Source: Octopus sinensis (lineage: Eukaryota). Taken from it: a DNA stretch of 16,833 nt. A program made the position numbers and the translations under genes. Position 1 is the stretch's first letter. The number at the start of each line of letters is the position of its first letter. This document shows, piece after piece, positions 1,196 through 16,833 of the stretch. Location of the stretch: positions 1-16,833 of the forward strand of contig NW_021824982.1 in the NCBI RefSeq assembly GCF_006345805.1, written 5' to 3'. Under the pieces are notes generated by a model that did no database searches, was not told the origin of the DNA, and saw only the letters and a list, made by a program, of their open reading frames with translations.

Positions 1196-1763
1196 GAGAG
1201 AGAGAGAAAGAGAGAGAGAGAGAAGGATAAAGAGAGAGAGAGAGAGAAGGAGAGAAAGAGAGAGAGAAGGAGAGAGAGAAGGAGAGAGAGAAGGAGAGAG
1301 AGAAGGAGAGAGAGAAGGAGAAAGAGAGAGAGAAGAAGAGAAAGAGAGAAGGAGAAAGAGAGAGAAGGAGAAAGAGAGAGAGAAGGAGAAAGAGAGAGAG
1401 AAGGAGAGAGAGAAGGAGAAAGAGAGAGAGAAGGAGACAGAGAGAGAGAAGGAGAGAGAGAAGGAGAAAGAGAGAGAGAAGGAGAGAAAGAGAGAGAGAA
1501 GGAGAAAGAGAGAGAGAAGGAGAGAGAGAGAAGGAGAGAGAGAGAAGGAAAGAGAGAGAGAAGGAGAAAGAGAGAGAGAAGGAGAGAGAGAGAAGGAGAA
1601 AGAGAGAGAGAAGGAGAGAGAGAGAGAAGGAGAAAGAGAGAGAGAAGGAGAAAGAAAGAGAGAAGGAGAGAGAGAGAGAAGGAGAGAGAGAAGTAGAAAG
1701 AGAGAGAGAGAGAAGGAGAAAGAGAGAGAGAGAGGGAGAGATAGAGAGAGAGAGAGGGAGAGA
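1196..1763. repeat. About 570-bp near-pure polypurine (GA)n tract punctuated by GAGAAG/GAGAAA hexamers
   Basis: Almost only G and A on the + strand. It produces the spurious RE/EK-rich and SL-rich ORFs. Confidence 0.95.
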
Positions 1764-2038
1764 ATAAAAACGAATGGCAGGAAAAGAAGAAACAATAGGA
1801 GATAGAAAAGAAGAGTTTGAGAGACGGATAATGATGAAAGAGTAAGCGCCATATACAGTCTCGAATGTCTGTATACATATGTATATATATATATCTGTAT
1901 ACATGAACACTCGACTCTTAATCACCTGTGTCTATATACAGGTGAATTTGTCCAAGATGTTCCCTTATTAATTTACTCATCAAGGCCATGATGACAACAA
2001 CAATGATTTTATTCTTATCATTATATCATTAATATTAA

Positions 2039-2264
2039 GGCGGTGAGCTGGCAAAATCGTTAGCGCACCGGACGAAAATGCTTTCTCGCATTTCGTCCGT
2101 CTTTATGTTCAGAGTTCAAATTCCGCCGATGTTAACTTTGACTTTCATCCTTTTGGGGTCGATATAATAAATACAAGTTGAGCATTGGGGTTGATATAAT
2201 CGACTTATACCCTCTCCCAATTGTTGGCCTTGTTTCTCGATTTGAATCCATTATTATTATTATT
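2039..2264 (+). mobile_element. tRNA-derived SINE, monomer (family A), with (ATT)n tail
   Basis: Starts GGCGGTGAGCTGGCAAAATCGTTAG (A-box-like) and has the B box GTTCAAATTCC at 2114-2124. It is homologous to the copies at 10679-11068 (-), 13955-14117 and 14118-14501, and ends in (ATT)n at 2250-2264. Confidence 0.88.
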
Positions 2265-2444
2265 GAGTGAGAGAGCAGTGCATGCCATCAAAGTGACACT
2301 GGGGTAAAATATACGAAGCCCAATATACCCATCATGACTACCCGTCTGATAAAGGTACACCAGGCACATGCATCACAACCATATGTGCGCGACATGGTGA
2401 TCTCATATCAAGATAAACAGCACATGACCTTGCAGGTGGGGCCC
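2265..2444 (-). mobile_element. 180-bp interspersed-repeat fragment, probably the 3' end of a 5'-truncated non-LTR retroelement inserted into (ATT)n
   Basis: Sharp-edged block of complex sequence between two (ATT)n/(TTA)n tracts. On the minus strand it would end in an (AAT)n tail. I recall it as a common octopus repeat but have not verified this. Confidence 0.55.
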
Positions 2445-2479
2445 TTATTATTATTATTATTATTATCATTATTATTATT

Positions 2480-2540
<61 letters not shown>
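2445..2540. repeat. (TTA)n microsatellite
   Basis: Directly visible. Confidence 0.97.
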
Positions 2541-2541
<1 letters not shown>

Positions 2542-2825
2542 AAATCAATATTTACGTAATCATTGTTCATCCATATGTGGTGGAAACAGCTGAAACTGAG
2601 GAATAACTGTGATATCAGTATATCCATTCTTCGCGACTGATGAAAACTTCCTGGCTATTCAGTTTGTATGAAGCACAATGTTCTTTAGTCTTACCAACTT
2701 AGGTAATAATTAATTAAAAAATTTTTCGAGGTAATAAAAACAAACAAATCAGTGAACTCTTTTCGGTGGTAATGCGAGCAAGTCAAGGTTAATTCTTGTT
2801 TATAATTTAATAATTGGTCTTTGAA

Positions 2826-3735
2826 AATAACAAACTAATTGTGTGTGCGGTCTTTTCAACTGGATTAAATGACGGTTTAGTCGAACACAATAATCCATTA
2901 CCAAACCTAGAAGAAGTGTTCTCAAGATTAAATGGAGGGAAAATGTTCTCGAAGTTAAACTTCTCGGAGGCTTATCTGCAGATACAGCAGAGGAAGATTG
3001 ATCACACGTTTTAACAATCAACACACACCATGGATTGGATGAATTCAAACAACTTCTTTTTGGAGTAAAAGTGGCACCTGCCATATTGCAACAAGTGATG
3101 GACGCAATGCTAAACGATTGCGACTTCGCCATCGTTTATCTCGAAGATATTTTGATAAAAAGCGAGTCATTGGAGCAACATTTCGAACATACTGAAAAAG
3201 TATTCAGATAAATAAATGAATTTGGGTTTAGACTAACAGAGGAAAAGTGTGAATTTTTGATGAAAAAAATTAAATATATAGGTCAAGTAATTGACGAAAG
3301 GGGACGAAGGCCAGACCCATCAAGGGCGACGGCAATACGGAATATGCCTCCCCCAACGAACGTCAAATTGTTACAAATTGTTACAAACTTTCAAAATTGG
3401 TGATAAGGTGTACATGAGGTCGTATAAGAAAGGAAAACATTACTGGGAAGAAAGCAAAAATTACAAAGTACATAGGCAAAATGATGTACGGAATTAAAAG
3501 CAGAAAAGGTATTGGAAAAAGACATAGAAACCAATTGAAGAAGAGATTCGCAGAAAATGAGCCAGGCAGATTAGAAGAACCTATGAAATGGCTGTATGAC
3601 ACATTCCAGGAACCAACACCTTTTGAAGGGGTTGAACCTACGCGTACAAATGGAAGAGAAAAGAAGAACGCAGAGTTCCTACAAATAGACGCCAAAAAGG
3701 AAAAAAATATTAAGTTGGAAAAAGAAAAACGCTAA
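2826..3735 (+). mobile_element. pol: Degenerate Ty3/Gypsy (K02A2.6-like) pol relic: RT domain fused to the post-integrase C-terminal tail
   Basis: Translates as NKLIVCAVFSTGLND...PLPNLEEVFSRLNGGKMFSKLNFSEAYLQIQ, then a frameshift near 2988, then LTINTHHGL...LLFGVKVAPAILQQVMDAML...YLED (3137-3148, decayed YLDD)...stop 3209-3211...GFRLTEEKCEF...IKYIGQVIDERGRRPDP...PPTNVKLLQ. It then jumps to FKIGDKVYMRSY...W(frameshift)KITKYIGKMMY...RHRNQLKKRF and a stop at 3733-3735. Confidence 0.93.
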
Positions 3736-4884: not shown

Positions 4885-4973
4885 TTTTCCCTACTCTCTC
4901 TCCCTTTCTTTCTCTCTCTCTCTCTTTCTCTCTCTCTGTCGTACTCTGCTATTTCTCTGTCTCTCTCTTTCTC

Positions 4974-5030
<57 letters not shown>

Positions 5031-5370
5031 ATCTCACTCTGTCGTACTCTGCTCTTTCTCTGTCTCTCTCATTCTCTCACCATGTCTCCTTTGCTTCTTT
5101 CTTCTCTCTTCTTTCCCTTGTCTTTATCGATGTCACACCTCCCTCATATTCTCTCCTCTGTCTCCTCCCTCGTATTCTATCCATATCCCTTCTCCCTTCC
5201 TTCCTCTTTCTCTATCTGTTTTTCACTTTTCCCCATACCACTCTCTTCTCTATCCCCCCTTTCTCCTCCGCACTTTCACTTTACACTTTCATTTTCATTA
5301 CACACACACACACACACATACAGATATATAAATATACATATATATATTTATATATACATATATATTTATA

Positions 5371-5539: not shown

Positions 5540-5911
5540 CACCACATCTGCCACCACCACCACCATCACAACCACCACTATCACAACCACTACCATCACC
5601 ATCATCACCACCACTAAAACCAACAACAGCAGTCATCACTATCACGGACATCATCACCCGCATCGCATCATCATCGTCATCATGACAACCACAACCACCA
5701 ACACCACCACCACCACCACCACCACCACTACCACCACCACCACTACCATCATCATCATCCTCACTGCCAACACCAACACCATTACCACCACCACTACCAC
5801 CACCATCATCATCATCATCATCATCACCGCCACCATCATCATCATCGGGGTCTTCACCACTACCACCACCACCACCACCACCACCACCACCACCACCACC
5901 ACCACCCTCAC

Positions 5912-5955
<44 letters not shown>

Positions 5956-5965
5956 CCATCACTTT
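5540..5965. repeat. Compound (ACC)n/(ATC)n trinucleotide repeat
   Basis: Directly visible. All frames give homopolymeric peptides. Confidence 0.93.
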
Positions 5966-6169
5966 CATTCCACATGCCTCACCTTCATCATTATCGTCGC
6001 TGTTACTGCAACTGAAACACGATCACTAACTTCCTTCCCCGCCACCACCGATACTATCACACAAATTTTAGGGACCCAACATGGTCCCCAAAATCAACAG
6101 CAACAACAAAAGCAACAACGCAGCCATTTTAGTAGCAACAGCACAAACAGTAGTACACTCCGCTTGATT

Positions 6170-6860
6170 CTACCACCGAAGCCACCACCACCACCACCAC
6201 CACCAACAGCTCCACCACCATCACCAGCACTTGCATCACCATCGACACTACCACCACAACTACCACCATCACCACCACTGCCAACATCACCGACGCTACC
6301 ACCACCACCACCAACACCAACACTGGCACTACTACCACACCGTGGACCCCTACCACTACCAGCATTTGCACCACCAGCACTTGCAACACGACGACCGCCA
6401 CTAGCACCACTACCATCAGCACCAGCACCAGCACCAGCACCAGCACCACCACAACGACCACCAGCACTTGCACCACCACCACCACCACAACGACGACCAC
6501 TACCATCATCATCACCATCACAACCACCACAACATTCACCGCCGCCGCTGCCACTGCCGCCACCGATGCCGCCACCACCACGACCACCACCACGGCTACC
6601 ACCACCAACATCACCACCACCACCACCACCACCACCACCACCACCTGCACTTGCGCCACCTCCGCCGCCGCCGCCAACACTACCATCATCATCATCATCA
6701 TCATCTCAAGCACTACCAATGCAACCATCGTCGAAGCGACGGCCGAGGTAGCCTCTGCCATCGCCACAAACCACTAAATAGAAATCACAGCTCCATCATA
6801 ATCAATCGATCGTTACGACCAGAACCTCCCACACCGCTACCCACATCCCACTACCCACAC
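6170..6860. repeat. Degenerate (ACC)n/(AGC)n/(GCC)n trinucleotide array with a recurrent GCACTTGC motif
   Basis: Triplet-periodic, C/A-rich sequence. GCACTTGC recurs near 6226, 6377, 6464 and 6647, with a variant GCATTTGC near 6362. Confidence 0.88.
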
Positions 6861-12971: not shown

Positions 12972-13047
<76 letters not shown>

Positions 13048-13136
13048 TTGTTGTGTGTGTGTGTGTGTGTGTGTGTGCGTGCGTGCGTGCGTGTATGTGT
13101 GTGTGTGTGTATAATGTATATATTTATGTACATATA

Positions 13137-13168
<32 letters not shown>

Positions 13169-13212
13169 CCGGAGTAAACACATAAATGTGAAACAAGATA
13201 TATATATCTATC

Positions 13213-13247
<35 letters not shown>

Positions 13248-13262
13248 TATATATTATATATG

Positions 13263-13320
<58 letters not shown>

Positions 13321-13367
13321 TACATACAATATATTGATTATATATATGTAATATATATGTATGTATG

Positions 13368-13424
<57 letters not shown>

Positions 13425-13490
13425 ATATATACATACATACAATATATTGATTTTATATATATGTATATGCATATACGTATATACACAGTG
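12972..13490. repeat. (TG)n followed by a long degenerate (TA)n tract
   Basis: Directly visible. Confidence 0.95.
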
Positions 13491-14809: not shown

Positions 14810-15385
14810 ACTGTGCTTACACACAAGCAACACAAGCACACGAACACACATACACACATACACACATACACACGTACAATCATACGCAAACATACACACA
14901 CGCGCACATAGGCCATAGACATAAATGGATAAAAAAAACTAACACCACACACACACACACATACACACACACACATACACACACAGCTCATAGACATAAA
15001 CACACAAAGAAAAACACACACACATACACCACACATACTTCACACACACATCTGTGCGTACACACAAATACACACTTACACACACACACACGCGTAGGCA
15101 CGCACGCACATACACCGTGCACACATACACAAGCACATACAAAAATGCACATACACGGACGCACACATACACAAGCCCACAAACATATACACACACACAT
15201 ATATACATGCATAAACACATAAACAAACATGCACACGCCCACACATACACACACACACACAGACAATACACACACACATGCGAGCGAGTTCTTATACACA
15301 CGGGAAAAAAACTTGCGTATTCATACACAGATACGTGCGCATACACATACGTACACACATACACAAACATACACATACGCATACA
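14810..15385. repeat. Degenerate (CA)n-rich tract
   Basis: Directly visible. It is the source of the HT/CV-rich ORFs. Confidence 0.92.
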
Positions 15386-16098: not shown

Positions 16099-16181
16099 GT
16101 AAGCACACATTTTTGCATAGGTGCAACTCATTTTTGCCAGGTGACTGCACACATATACAAACACACAAACATATACACATA

Positions 16182-16378
16182 GGCGCAGGAGTGGCTGTGT
16201 GGTAAGTAGCTTGCTTACAAACCACATGGCTCCGGGTTTAGTCCCACTGCGTAGCACCTTGGGCAAGTGTCTTCTACTATAGCTTCGGGCCGACCAAAGC
16301 CTTGTGAGTGGATTTGGTAAACGGAAACTGAAAGAAGCCTGTCGTATATGTATATATATATGTGTGTGTGTGTGTGTT
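16182..16378 (+). mobile_element. tRNA-derived CORE-type SINE (family C) running into (TA)n/(TG)n
   Basis: A box TGGCTGTGTGG (16192-16202), B-box-like GGTTTAGTCCC (16235-16245) and CORE motif CACCTTGGGCAAGTGTCTT (16255-16273). Confidence 0.88.
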
Positions 16379-16592
16379 TTACCATTTTTTTAATGGTAAA
16401 ACAGTGAAACCGGTAAGTGAATAACCACCTTTTAAAATTGCATTTTCAAACCTTCTTTCATATACATATACATATACATATATATGTATATATACAAATA
16501 CATGTACATAAATTGAAATAAGAGCGAAACTGCTCTAACGCTGTAGTTAACGCGCATGAATGAAAACACATACCCTAACAGGGAGGATAATC

Positions 16593-16695
16593 GTACGAAA
16601 AGTGCCGATCGAGAATTCTTAATATTGACGTCAGTTTCGGCAATTTCCGTTGCCTCATCACTTAAGACCGCTCGATTGTTCGGCTCTTTCCGGAC
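16593..16695 (-). ncRNA. Type I hammerhead ribozyme fold with two point defects
   Basis: Minus strand reads TCTTAA-GTGATGA-GGCAA-CGGAAA-TTGCC-GAAA-CTGACGTCAA-TA-TTAAGA. Helix I is a perfect 6 bp and is extended by further stems out to 16593/16695. Helix II is 5 bp with a 6-nt loop. Helix III is a 12-nt palindrome with one mismatch. The core deviates at C3 (now G) and position 16.2 (now A). Confidence 0.78.
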
Positions 16696-16833
16696 TCGCT
16701 TTGCTATTAGTATTTATGTTTTCGTCATCCAAATTACCGGATGATTTAGCGATTCGCTAAAATTAATATAAACACCAGTTTGCAATGTTTCGTTAAAAAG
16801 CAATATCTCAAAGAATATTAATAATAAACGCCA

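What the first reader, a model, noticed from the sequence alone, without database searches (positions are those of the whole stretch)
16593..16695. Hidden hammerhead ribozyme with palindromic helix III and long interrupted helix I
Seen in sequence (minus strand): all three helices and both core strands of a type I hammerhead are in the correct order and spacing. Helix I pairs 16617-16622 with 16662-16667. After a 3x3 internal loop it continues 16608-16613/16671-16676. After a 4-nt bulge it continues 16604-16607/16681-16684, with further pairs out to 16593/16695, about 25 bp in total. Helix II is GGCAA/TTGCC with loop CGGAAA. Helix III, ACTGACGTCAAT, is one base from the perfect palindrome ACTGACGTCAGT, which would restore a GUA cleavage triplet with the cut between 16623 and 16622. 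Established: palindromic helix III is typical of dimer-acting hammerheads of Penelope-like elements and retrozymes, and contact between a helix I internal loop and loop II accelerates natural hammerheads. Inference: this is a decayed copy of a ribozyme-bearing mobile family. It has no visible ORF and differs from the motif at 166-202, so it may be an undescribed cephalopod retrozyme or non-autonomous PLE. This copy is probably inactive because C3G breaks the C3-G8 pair.
Basis: partly seen in the sequence, partly recalled or inferred. Interest (0 to 1): 0.85.

Follow-up and report, generated by a model that had tools for sequence, protein, structure and literature searches.

The report
Decayed hammerhead ribozyme retrozyme copy
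That makes it a new example of a known kind.

Summary
On the minus strand, 16695-16593 holds a type I hammerhead (HHR) with C3->G, G16.2->A and one outer helix I mismatch. It is not a chance motif. The stretch 16515-16800 is one copy of a dispersed 358-nt non-coding repeat. In the source genome (2.72 Gb) the 32-nt core and helix II occur 313 times with up to 3 mismatches, against 0 for the control. Helix I has 26 bp and continues into a rod; the circular fold has z = -7.5.

In 87 copies from 56 loci, the 3' ends cluster at two sites about 55 nt apart and the 5' ends are scattered. Thirty copies exceed one unit. Twenty-four loci carry a head-to-head inverted partner and none a tail-to-tail one. 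Flanks are microsatellites. These are the published hallmarks of insertion by Penelope-like elements (PLEs), and the genome has thousands of GIY-YIG candidates.

Caveats: Rfam models miss the family, two-ribozyme tandems are rare, no autonomous partner was found, cleavage is untested, and the genome search closed before the last census.

Verdict: a new member of the non-LTR retrozyme / non-autonomous PLE kind. The window copy is a relic.

The parts
16515..16800 (-). One copy of the 358-nt repeat unit (unit positions 41 to 341 in my numbering, sense strand = minus). About 89% identical to the family consensus. It may run on to the contig end at 16833 with weak similarity.
   Evidence: BLAST against the consensus; genome-wide matches; alignment of 33 copies.
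16593..16695 (-). Type I hammerhead with a long interrupted helix I (25 bp in this copy, 26 in the consensus).
   Evidence: Direct reading; MFE fold recovers the outer helix I; pair counts over 41 sequences give 87.7% of cells paired, against 28-50% for slid partners.
16655..16661 (-). Core strand 1, GUGAUGA. The consensus is CUGAUGA, so C3->G at 16661 breaks the C3-G8 pair.
   Evidence: (the window is listed as a 1-mismatch hit, GTGATGAGG...).
16639..16654 (-). Helix II GGCAA/UUGCC with 6-nt loop CGGAAA, identical to the consensus.
   Evidence: helix 4: 91% of cells paired.
16635..16638 (-). Core strand 2, GAAA (G12 A13 A14 A15.1).
16624..16635 (-). Helix III ACUGACGUCAAU. The subfamily consensus is the 12-nt palindrome ACUGACGUCAGU, so G16.2->A at 16625 gives a C/A mismatch.
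16622..16623 (-). Predicted cleavage site: after A17 (16623) and before U1.1 (16622). The triplet is AUA here and GUA in the consensus.
   Evidence: Position follows from the hammerhead numbering applied. Cleavage itself was not tested.
16460..16514 (.). TA/CA-rich microsatellite that abuts the 3' end of the copy. It is the kind of target seen next to nearly all family copies.
   Evidence: Microsatellite or AT-rich target bias of PLEs is described in PMC8557442 and PMC11167929.

Best explanation
Window 16515-16800 (minus strand) is a dead, roughly 30-45 million-year-old copy of a 358-nt non-coding retroelement family. The family is a non-LTR retrozyme, that is, a non-autonomous derivative of Penelope-like elements (PLEs).

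**Shown**
- The family's sense RNA carries a complete type I hammerhead, which would cut after unit position 233.
- The element inserted by target-primed reverse transcription of that same strand. Reverse transcription started at two alternative internal sites, unit positions about 34 and about 89. These lie about 160 and 215 nt downstream of the cleavage site, beside an AC-rich hairpin.
- Insertions went into TA/TG microsatellites.
- They are 5'-truncated, often longer than one unit, and often paired head-to-head.

**Inferred**
- A PLE reverse transcriptase / GIY-YIG endonuclease supplied in trans did the copying.
- The template was a circular RNA (cleaved by the hammerhead, then ligated) or an uncleaved multimer. 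A linear cleaved monomer does not fit: 30 of 87 copies exceed one unit, and 5' ends do not pile up at the cleavage site.
- The window copy cannot cleave, because of C3->G with G16.2->A in addition.
For: **The hammerhead**
- The motif is at the stated coordinates.
- Repeat family: 747 first-look candidates, and 52 scored matches at 78-88% identity.
- The 32-nt core plus helix II occurs 313 times with up to 3 mismatches, against 0 for the control, and 21 hits are exact.
- The consensus has all invariant hammerhead bases and three helices in type I order, and it passes a tight descriptor.
- Chance rates are 0.03 per window for a near-miss and about 1e-4 or less for a strict core.
- Among the 42 hammerhead-bearing copies, 28 have an intact core.

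**Structure-preserving change**
- The outer helix I pair is GC in 22 sequences, AU in 9 and GU in 6.
- Cells changed on both sides number 22, against 11.9 +/- 2.9 in shuffles (0 of 500 shuffles reach the observed value).
- Both helix III variants are palindromes.
- L058 carries UCCCAA/UUGGGA in inner helix I.
- The unit RNA folds far better than shuffles: -115.4 against -73.8 +/- 5.6 kcal/mol, z = -7.5.

**Insertion anatomy**
- In 87 copies from 56 loci, 3' ends fall at unit 71-100 in 39 copies and at 21-40 in 20, while 5' ends are spread.
- Thirty copies exceed 358 nt, up to 1.74 units.
- There are 24 head-to-head pairs and no tail-to-tail pair. Typically one arm ends near 89 and the other near 31-34.
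- Flanks are microsatellites.
- These features match the PLE hallmarks in PMC8557442: 5' truncation, partial tandems, an adjacent inverted 5'-truncated copy, a tail at one end, and microsatellite bias. They also match PMC11167929: two internal reverse-transcription start sites define the tail, both DNA strands are cut and extended, targets are AT-rich, and initiation is in an AC-rich stem-loop.

**Genome and literature context**
- The genome has 4846 GIY-YIG candidates; 147 of the 150 scored are over the cut-off, with open frames up to 883 aa.
- Non-LTR retrozymes have been described as PLE derivatives (PMC7229834 and the bioRxiv preprint 10.64898/2026.07.22.740005).
- C3G is a ribozyme-dead mutation (PMC11167929).
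Against: - No Rfham hammerhead model reaches its gathering score, even on intact copies. The best match is Hammerhead_3 at 16.7 bits against a cut-off of 48.5.
- Self-cleavage, transcription and circular RNA are all untested.
- Copies with two hammerheads, which are needed to release a unit-length RNA, are rare. They occur in 2 of 56 loci, and only 3-4 family hits were found genome-wide with both 10-mers intact.
- No autonomous PLE sharing sequence with the unit was found. The ten loci with the genome's other (PLE-type) hammerhead have no BLAST similarity to it.
- The tail is about 55 nt, against 30-40 nt in the literature.
- Identity to the consensus is flat along the unit (0.90 in the hammerhead and 0.90 elsewhere), so the copies themselves show no constraint. 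The covariation evidence is small and comes from related sequences.
- The 60 loci were chosen by similarity or by an intact core, so the intact-core fraction is biased upward.
Confidence: 0.85

Rival explanations
1. The hammerhead-like motif is a coincidence in an ordinary SINE-like repeat mobilised by a LINE, and the RNA never cleaves.
For: - Rfam models do not call it.
- A loose near-miss descriptor hits 0.03 times per shuffled window.
- Copies end next to simple repeats, as many SINEs do.
- The genome is SINE- and LINE-rich (PMC13282606).
Against: - The consensus meets a tight descriptor that no shuffle met in 15,187 windows.
- Helix I continues for 26 bp and into a rod with z = -7.5.
- The window's two defects are exactly the positions where it departs from its own family consensus.
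- Two alternative 3' ends, copies longer than one unit and 24 head-to-head pairs are not features of LINE-mobilised SINEs.
- ARAGORN finds no tRNA-like head in the window.
Confidence: 0.05
2. It is a classical tandem-array non-LTR retrozyme or satellite. Its life cycle runs through multimeric arrays and abundant circular RNAs, and the dispersed copies are by-products.
For: - The unit size (358 nt), GC content (38.5%), lack of an ORF and type I hammerhead match the published description (PMC7229834).
- Some tandem copies with two hammerheads exist (L045, L005).
- The unit RNA is highly self-paired.
- The monomer proportion in known families ranges from 0 to 1.
Against: - No array longer than 1.74 units was seen in 56 loci.
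- Only 3-4 family dimers were found with both 10-mers intact.
- The genome search scores only the best candidates and was closed before a fuller census, so arrays could have been missed.
- This differs from the best explanation in emphasis, not in kind.
Confidence: 0.08
3. It is a DNA transposon relic (MITE or foldback element), and the inverted pairs are its terminal inverted repeats.
For: Twenty-four of 56 loci carry two copies in inverted orientation.
Against: - The junction between the arms falls at a different unit position in every locus, so there are no fixed termini.
- The outer ends are the same two 3' ends seen in single copies.
- Thirty-two loci have a single arm.
- Copies longer than one unit are direct partial tandems.
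Confidence: 0.02

Closest known systems
Metazoan non-LTR retrozymes (Cervera & de la Pena 2020, PMC7229834; Li, Clavereau & Pollet 2026 preprint, 10.64898/2026.07.22.740005)
   Same: Non-coding unit of a few hundred nt (358), low GC (38.5%), a canonical type I hammerhead on the sense strand, a highly self-paired unit RNA, co-occurrence with PLEs, and dispersed monomers alongside rare dimers.
   Different: The family is mostly dispersed copies of 0.2-1.7 units, not arrays. Copies with two ribozymes are rare. Circular RNA is not shown. No mollusc of this class (cephalopod) appears in the held papers. Helix I is unusually long.
Hammerheads in the pseudo-LTRs of Penelope-like elements (Cervera & de la Pena 2014, PMC4209133; Frangieh et al. 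2024, PMC11167929)
   Same: Type I topology, a palindromic helix III sequence, a ribozyme lying upstream of the internal reverse-transcription start sites, and the same insertion anatomy (tail, partial tandem, inverted partner, AT-rich or microsatellite targets).
   Different: PLE hammerheads are minimal, with a 1-2 bp helix III that depends on a dimer or on protein. The genome's own PLE-type motif GUACCUGAAGAGACCC...GAAACAUGUGUC is of that sort and scores over Rfam's RF00163 cut-off. This family has a 4-5 bp helix III, a 5 bp helix II and a 26 bp helix I, no ORF, and no detectable sequence similarity to those loci.
Schistosoma Sm-alpha and amphibian satellite 2 hammerhead repeats
   Same: Short non-coding repeats with type I hammerheads that are both dispersed and tandem. 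They are now counted among retrozyme-like elements (PMC7229834, PMC8490949).
   Different: Different sequence and host. The amphibian ribozymes have a one-pair helix III and need dimers. I made no direct sequence comparison.
Plant LTR retrozymes (PMC4918200)
   Same: Non-autonomous retroelements whose hammerheads release an RNA that circularises and serves as the transposition intermediate.
   Different: Those have type III hammerheads inside real LTRs, a primer binding site and polypurine tract, 4-bp target-site duplications, GC above 55%, and mobilisation by Ty3/gypsy elements. None of these applies here.

Membership tests
Hammerhead ribozyme, type I | Invariant core: C3 U4 G5 A6 N7 G8 A9, G12 A13 A14, A15.1-U16.1, H17 | tested here: met
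   The family consensus and 28 of 42 sampled copies have CUGAUGA, GAAA and UA/UU/UC at the right positions. Twenty-one genomic copies have the exact 32-nt core plus helix II.
Hammerhead ribozyme, type I | The same invariant core in the window copy itself | tested here: not met
   16661 is G where C3 is required (GUGAUGA), and 16625 is A where G16.2 pairs with C15.2. C3G is a ribozyme-dead mutation in PMC11167929.
Hammerhead ribozyme, type I | Three helices around the core, with helix I open and helices II and III closed by loops | tested here: met
   Helix I has 6+6+4+10 bp, helix II 5 bp with a 6-nt loop, and helix III 4-5 bp with a 4-nt loop. Across 41 sequences 87.7% of cells are paired, against 28-50% when partners are slid.
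Hammerhead ribozyme, type I | Score at or above the gathering threshold of an Rfam hammerhead covariance model | tested here: not met
   No hit in the window or in 14 loci with intact copies. The best is Hammerhead_3 at 16.7 bits against 48.5. RF00163 does find another hammerhead family in the same genome. That model has a short loopless helix III and a 4-bp helix II.
Hammerhead ribozyme, type I | Site-specific self-cleavage giving 2',3'-cyclic phosphate and 5'-OH ends | not testable with these tools
   Needs in vitro transcription or RNA-end mapping.
Hammerhead ribozyme, type I | Tertiary contact between loop II and the internal loop of helix I | not tested
   The geometry is plausible: 6 bp of helix I before a 3x3 internal loop, and 5 bp of helix II under a 6-nt loop. 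I made no comparison with the known contact motifs.
Non-LTR retrozyme | Short non-coding unit of low GC carrying a type I hammerhead | tested here: met
   358 nt, GC 38.5%, longest open stretch 46 aa on the sense strand and 71 aa on the antisense strand. Criteria from PMC7229834.
Non-LTR retrozyme | Tandem copies, so that two hammerheads flank a unit | tested here: inconclusive
   Thirty of 87 copies exceed one unit, but only L005 and L045 hold two ribozymes. There are 3-4 family hits genome-wide with both 10-mers intact.
Non-LTR retrozyme | Expression as unit-length linear and circular RNA | not testable with these tools
   No transcriptome data were available. The predicted circular fold is very stable (z = -7.5), which is compatible but is not evidence of expression.
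Non-autonomous Penelope-like element | Frequent 5' truncation with defined 3' ends | tested here: met
   The 5' ends are spread over all eighteen 20-nt bins. The 3' ends fall at unit 71-100 in 39 of 87 copies and at 21-40 in 20 of 87.
Non-autonomous Penelope-like element | Partial tandems (pseudo-LTR) | tested here: met
   Thirty of 87 copies are 1.02-1.74 units long.
Non-autonomous Penelope-like element | An inverted 5'-truncated copy adjacent at the 5' end | tested here: met
   Twenty-four of 56 loci are head-to-head, none is tail-to-tail, and the junction gaps are -8 to +37 nt.
Non-autonomous Penelope-like element | An optional 'tail' between two reverse-transcription start sites, often at one end only | tested here: met
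   There are two 3'-end classes about 55 nt apart. In at least 10 pairs one arm ends at 75-93 and the other at 14-37. The literature gives 30-40 nt (PMC8557442, PMC11167929), so the tail is longer here.
Non-autonomous Penelope-like element | AT-rich or microsatellite targets | tested here: met
   (TA)n, (TG)n or (CA)n directly flank most of the 32 single-copy insertions, and the window copy as well.
Non-autonomous Penelope-like element | Sequence similarity to the pseudo-LTR or 3' end of an autonomous PLE in the same genome | tested here: inconclusive
   There is no BLAST similarity to ten loci carrying the genome's PLE-type hammerhead.
Non-autonomous Penelope-like element | Autonomous PLEs (RT plus GIY-YIG endonuclease) present in the genome | tested here: met
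   PF01541 gives 4846 first-look candidates. Of 150 scored, 147 are over the cut-off, with open frames up to 883 aa. PLEs are reported in Octopus (PMC13282606, PMC8557442).

The most novel reading that the evidence does not exclude
This may be the first characterised cephalopod retrozyme. It pairs a full-size, monomer-competent hammerhead that Rfam does not detect (26-bp helix I, stable helix III) with the complete insertion signature of Penelope-like elements.

One third of its dispersed copies are longer than one unit, and 5' ends do not pile up at the cleavage site. This would mean that the PLE machinery reverse-transcribed a circular, ribozyme-processed RNA by going round the circle. That would be direct genomic evidence for the rolling-circle step, which has so far only been proposed for animal retrozymes.
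Probability: 0.3. Interest if true: 0.55.

Novelty: new member of a known kind. Interest (0 to 1): 0.45.

Why it matters
- **Annotation gap.** Several hundred hammerhead copies in this genome are missed by the standard Rfam models. Ribozyme censuses based on those models therefore undercount full-size type I hammerheads with long helices.
- **An invertebrate case for the PLE link.** The proposal that animal retrozymes are non-autonomous PLE derivatives has so far been argued mainly from vertebrate sequence similarity. This family supports it from insertion anatomy instead: two 3' ends, head-to-head pairs, partial tandems and microsatellite targets.
- **A testable model.** The copy-length distribution allows a test of whether circular RNA is the transposition template.
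- **This locus.** The window copy itself is an inert relic with no expected function.

Tried and rejected
- **Rfam scans.** I scanned the window at gathering score and at E <= 10, 14 loci with intact copies, and one intact copy alone. No hammerhead model reached threshold, so Rfam cannot be used to file this family.
- **RF00163 over the whole genome.** It finds a different, PLE-type minimal hammerhead family (L061-L070), not this one. L068 is that type with a 63-nt insertion in loop II.
- **Constraint on the hammerhead among copies.** None was found: identity to the consensus is flat along the unit, as expected for dead copies.
- **Autonomous partner.**
  - The unit has no BLAST similarity to the PLE-hammerhead loci.
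I did not try another route.
  - An RT-like ORF sits next to the copy in L050/L039/L051. It is tail-to-tail with the copy, reaches only 22.3 bits on RVT_1 (below the cut-off), and has no Pfam GIY-YIG hit. I treat it as a lead only.
- **Relatives outside this genome.** The exact 28-nt core has no match in the metagenome or viral contig collections.
- **tRNA-like head.** ARAGORN finds nothing in the window.
- **Rejected readings.** I rejected MITE/foldback, LINE-dependent SINE and chance motif; the rivals section gives the reasons.

Full report
**Observation.**
On the minus strand the window reads 5'-GUCCGGAAAG A GCCG AACA AUCGAG CGG UCUUAA GUGAUGA GGCAA CGGAAA UUGCC GAAA CUGACGUCAAU A UUAAGA AUU CUCGAU CGGC A CUUUUCGUAC-3', from 16695 to 16593.
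- Helix I has 6 + 6 + 4 + 9 pairs. It is interrupted by a 3x3 loop, a 4-nt bulge and an A/A mismatch.
- Helix II has 5 bp under a 6-nt loop.
- GAAA follows helix II.
- Helix III is ACUGACGUCAAU.
- A17 is at 16623.

The copy departs from the hammerhead rule at C3 (G at 16661) and at 16.2 (A at 16625). It also has one mismatch in outer helix I (16595).

A descriptor scan finds no other near-hammerhead on either strand of the window. The minimal motif with these two defects is not very rare. It appears 18 times in 600 dinucleotide shuffles of the window. A defect-free core appeared once in 600 shuffles and never in 15,187. Rfam reports nothing in the window at gathering score or at E <= 10. From the window alone, then, the finding was plausible but not secure.

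**It is a repeat, and the consensus is a complete hammerhead.**
The window lies in a 2.72-Gb genome. Window 16540-16833 has 747 first-look candidates there. The 52 scored matches are 78-88% identical and lie on many chromosomes. An alignment of 33 copies gives, over the motif, the consensus UCUUAA CUGAUGA GGCAA CGGAAA UUGCC GAAA CUGAC(GC)GUCAGU A UUAAGA. Both of the window's defects are private departures from its own family.

The 32-nt core plus helix II occurs 313 times in the genome with up to 3 mismatches and 21 times exactly. The reversed control occurs 0 times. Allowing for decay and for 5'-truncated copies that lack this part, I infer that the family has on the order of a thousand copies.

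The consensus passes a tight descriptor that no shuffle met. In the consensus, helix I has 26 bp.

**The unit.**
- The repeat unit is 358 nt. In my numbering the core starts at 193 and cleavage falls after 233.
- GC content is 38.5%.
- The longest open stretch is 46 aa on the sense strand and 71 aa on the antisense strand.
- Folded as a circle, the unit RNA has an MFE of -115.4 kcal/mol, against -73.8 +/- 5.6 for shuffles (z = -7.5). Helix I runs on into a long rod.
- The window copy covers unit positions 41-341 (16800 down to 16515). It abuts a TA/CA microsatellite on its 3' side and lies 33 nt from the contig end on its 5' side.

**How the copies were made.**
I mapped 87 copies in 56 distinct loci onto the unit.
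- In the ribozyme-strand orientation, 3' ends cluster at unit 71-100 (39 copies) and at 21-40 (20 copies). The 5' ends fall in every 20-nt bin. The ribozyme strand is therefore the strand that was reverse-transcribed from a fixed 3' start, with 5' truncation.
- Thirty copies are longer than one unit, up to 1.74 units. These are direct partial tandems.
- Twenty-four loci hold two copies head-to-head with their 3' ends pointing outward. None is tail-to-tail. In at least ten pairs one arm ends near 89 and the other near 31-34.
- The junction between the arms differs in every locus.
- The flanks are almost always (TA)n, (TG)n or (CA)n.

This is the anatomy described for Penelope-like elements. Craig et al. 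(PMC8557442) list frequent 5' truncation, partial tandems that form pseudo-LTRs, an adjacent inverted 5'-truncated copy, a short tail at one end, and a bias for microsatellites. Frangieh et al. (PMC11167929) report the following:
- The tail is the stretch between two internal start sites of reverse transcription.
- Both target strands are cut and extended.
- Targets are AT-rich.
- Initiation lies in an AC-rich stem-loop about 90 nt downstream of the hammerhead cut.

In this family the two start sites lie about 160 and 215 nt downstream of the cut. Unit positions 1-30 (CCUAACACCC UAGUCACAUUUAGUGAC) form AC-rich hairpins in the predicted fold.

The genome is rich in the enzyme needed. PF01541 (GIY-YIG) gives 4846 candidates. 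Of the 150 scored, 147 are over the cut-off, and some lie in open frames of 780-880 aa.

**Template.**
A linear monomer released by the ribozyme would give copies of at most about 214 nt, with 5' ends at unit 234. Instead, a third of the copies exceed 358 nt. The bin holding the cleavage site has 4 of 87 5' ends, which is about the average. So the template was either an RNA circle or an uncleaved multimer; this is an inference. Two-ribozyme copies that could release a unit are rare. They occur in 2 of 56 loci, with 3-4 family hits genome-wide when both 10-mers are required intact.

**Selection on the structure.**
- The copies decay evenly. Identity to the consensus is 0.90 inside the hammerhead and 0.90 outside it, as expected for dead insertions.
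- BLAST identity averages 86%. The Jukes-Cantor distance is 0.11-0.16. On the Octopus vulgaris scale of PMC13282606 that corresponds to about 30-45 million years. This is an inference.
- Differences between lineages respect the fold:
  - The two subfamilies differ by a CG insertion that keeps helix III a perfect palindrome (12 or 14 nt).
  - They also differ by G-C to G-U or A-U at one outer helix I pair: GC in 22 sequences, AU in 9, GU in 6.
- Cells changed on both sides number 22, against 11.9 +/- 2.9 in shuffles (0 of 500 shuffles reach it). Across the alignment, 87.7% of cells are paired, against 28-50% with slid partners.
- One copy, L058, has UCCCAA/UUGGGA in place of UCUUAA/UUAAGA, which is two compensated pairs.
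The covariation evidence is therefore modest.

**Helix III.**
As a hairpin, helix III has 4-5 bp plus a tetraloop (-2.8 to -3.8 kcal/mol). As a duplex between two molecules it has 12-14 bp (-21 to -27 kcal/mol). Unlike the 1-2 bp helix III of PLE and amphibian hammerheads (PMC7229834), it does not need a partner.

**Comparison with the known.**
The family meets the sequence-level definition of a type I hammerhead in its consensus, but not in the window copy. It fails all Rfam hammerhead models. RF00163 does find a second, minimal PLE-type hammerhead in this genome, GUACCUGAAGAGACCC...GAAACAUGUGUC. That family is unrelated in sequence to this one.

By unit size, GC content, lack of ORF and ribozyme type, this is a non-LTR retrozyme in the sense of PMC7229834. 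By insertion anatomy it is a non-autonomous PLE, which a 2026 preprint argues is the same thing. Dispersed monomers are known for such families. The held literature has no paper on a cephalopod hammerhead element, and the exact core is absent from the metagenome and viral collections.

I did not confirm the species.

**Limits.**
- Cleavage, transcription and circular RNA are untested.
- The autonomous partner is not identified.
- The loci sampled were chosen by similarity or by an intact core.
I did not try to get round either limit.

**Verdict.**
The feature is a relic copy of a new member of a known kind. It is of moderate interest for ribozyme annotation and for the link between retrozymes and PLEs.

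Noticed in passing
window 16180-16345 (plus microsatellite 16345-16380): An abundant repeat of about 170-210 nt (GGCGCAGGAGTGGCTGTGTGGTAAGTAGCTTGC...) that ends in a TA/TG microsatellite. It has 78-93% identical copies in many of the fetched loci. It looks like a SINE with a box-B-like GGCTCCGGGTTTAGTCCC, though ARAGORN calls no tRNA.
   Followed up: partly
L061-L070 (centre near 1506), from G000: A second hammerhead family of the minimal PLE type (GTACCTGAAGAGACCCAGAACGGGTCGAAACATGTGTCGTAC, followed by AATAAA). Eight hits are over the RF00163 cut-off. L066 and L067 are two copies 431 nt apart on one strand, which suggests a tandem.
   Followed up: partly
L068 1501-1608 (minus): A PLE-type hammerhead with a 63-nt insertion in loop II and CUGAUGUG in place of CUGAUGAG. 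It sits exactly at the RF00163 cut-off (34 bits).
   Followed up: partly
L050 about 1750-2860 (minus); the same in L039 and L051: A broken RT-like ORF (LRYIDDSF...; RVT_1 at 22 bits, below the cut-off) with a C-terminal CSCGSLYKGET stretch that looks like the start of a GIY-YIG domain. It lies tail-to-tail about 130 nt from the 3' end of a family copy. The three loci share flanks, so this is one insertion in a triplicated segment.
   Followed up: partly
L058, inner helix I of its hammerhead: UCCCAA/UUGGGA replaces the consensus UCUUAA/UUAAGA, which is two compensated pairs in one copy. It may mark a subfamily. The genome census was not possible.
   Followed up: no
window 16801-16833 (contig end): The contig stops 33 nt past the 5' side of the copy. 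Craig et al. note that PLE tandem and inverted structures break assemblies, so a partner arm may lie beyond the end.
   Followed up: no
L016, L025 and L037, just 3' of the family copies: The same sequence (CTTTTACTTGTTTCAGTCATTTGACTGCGG...) follows the family's 3' end in three unrelated loci. It is probably the head of another abundant repeat that targets the same AT-rich tails.
   Followed up: no
window 1197-1763, 4894-5078, 5551-6645, 12972-13483, 14844-15279: Long, strongly strand-skewed simple repeats ((AG)n-like, (CT)n, (CCA)n, (TG)n/(TA)n, (AC)n). They account for the long 'ORFs' in several frames and for the GC-skew extremes.
   Followed up: partly
   Followed up: partly
L017 about 2035-3264 (minus): An open frame with thrombospondin type 1 (TSP1_ADAMTS) and Ig-like domain hits. 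It is probably a host exon near a family copy.
   Followed up: no
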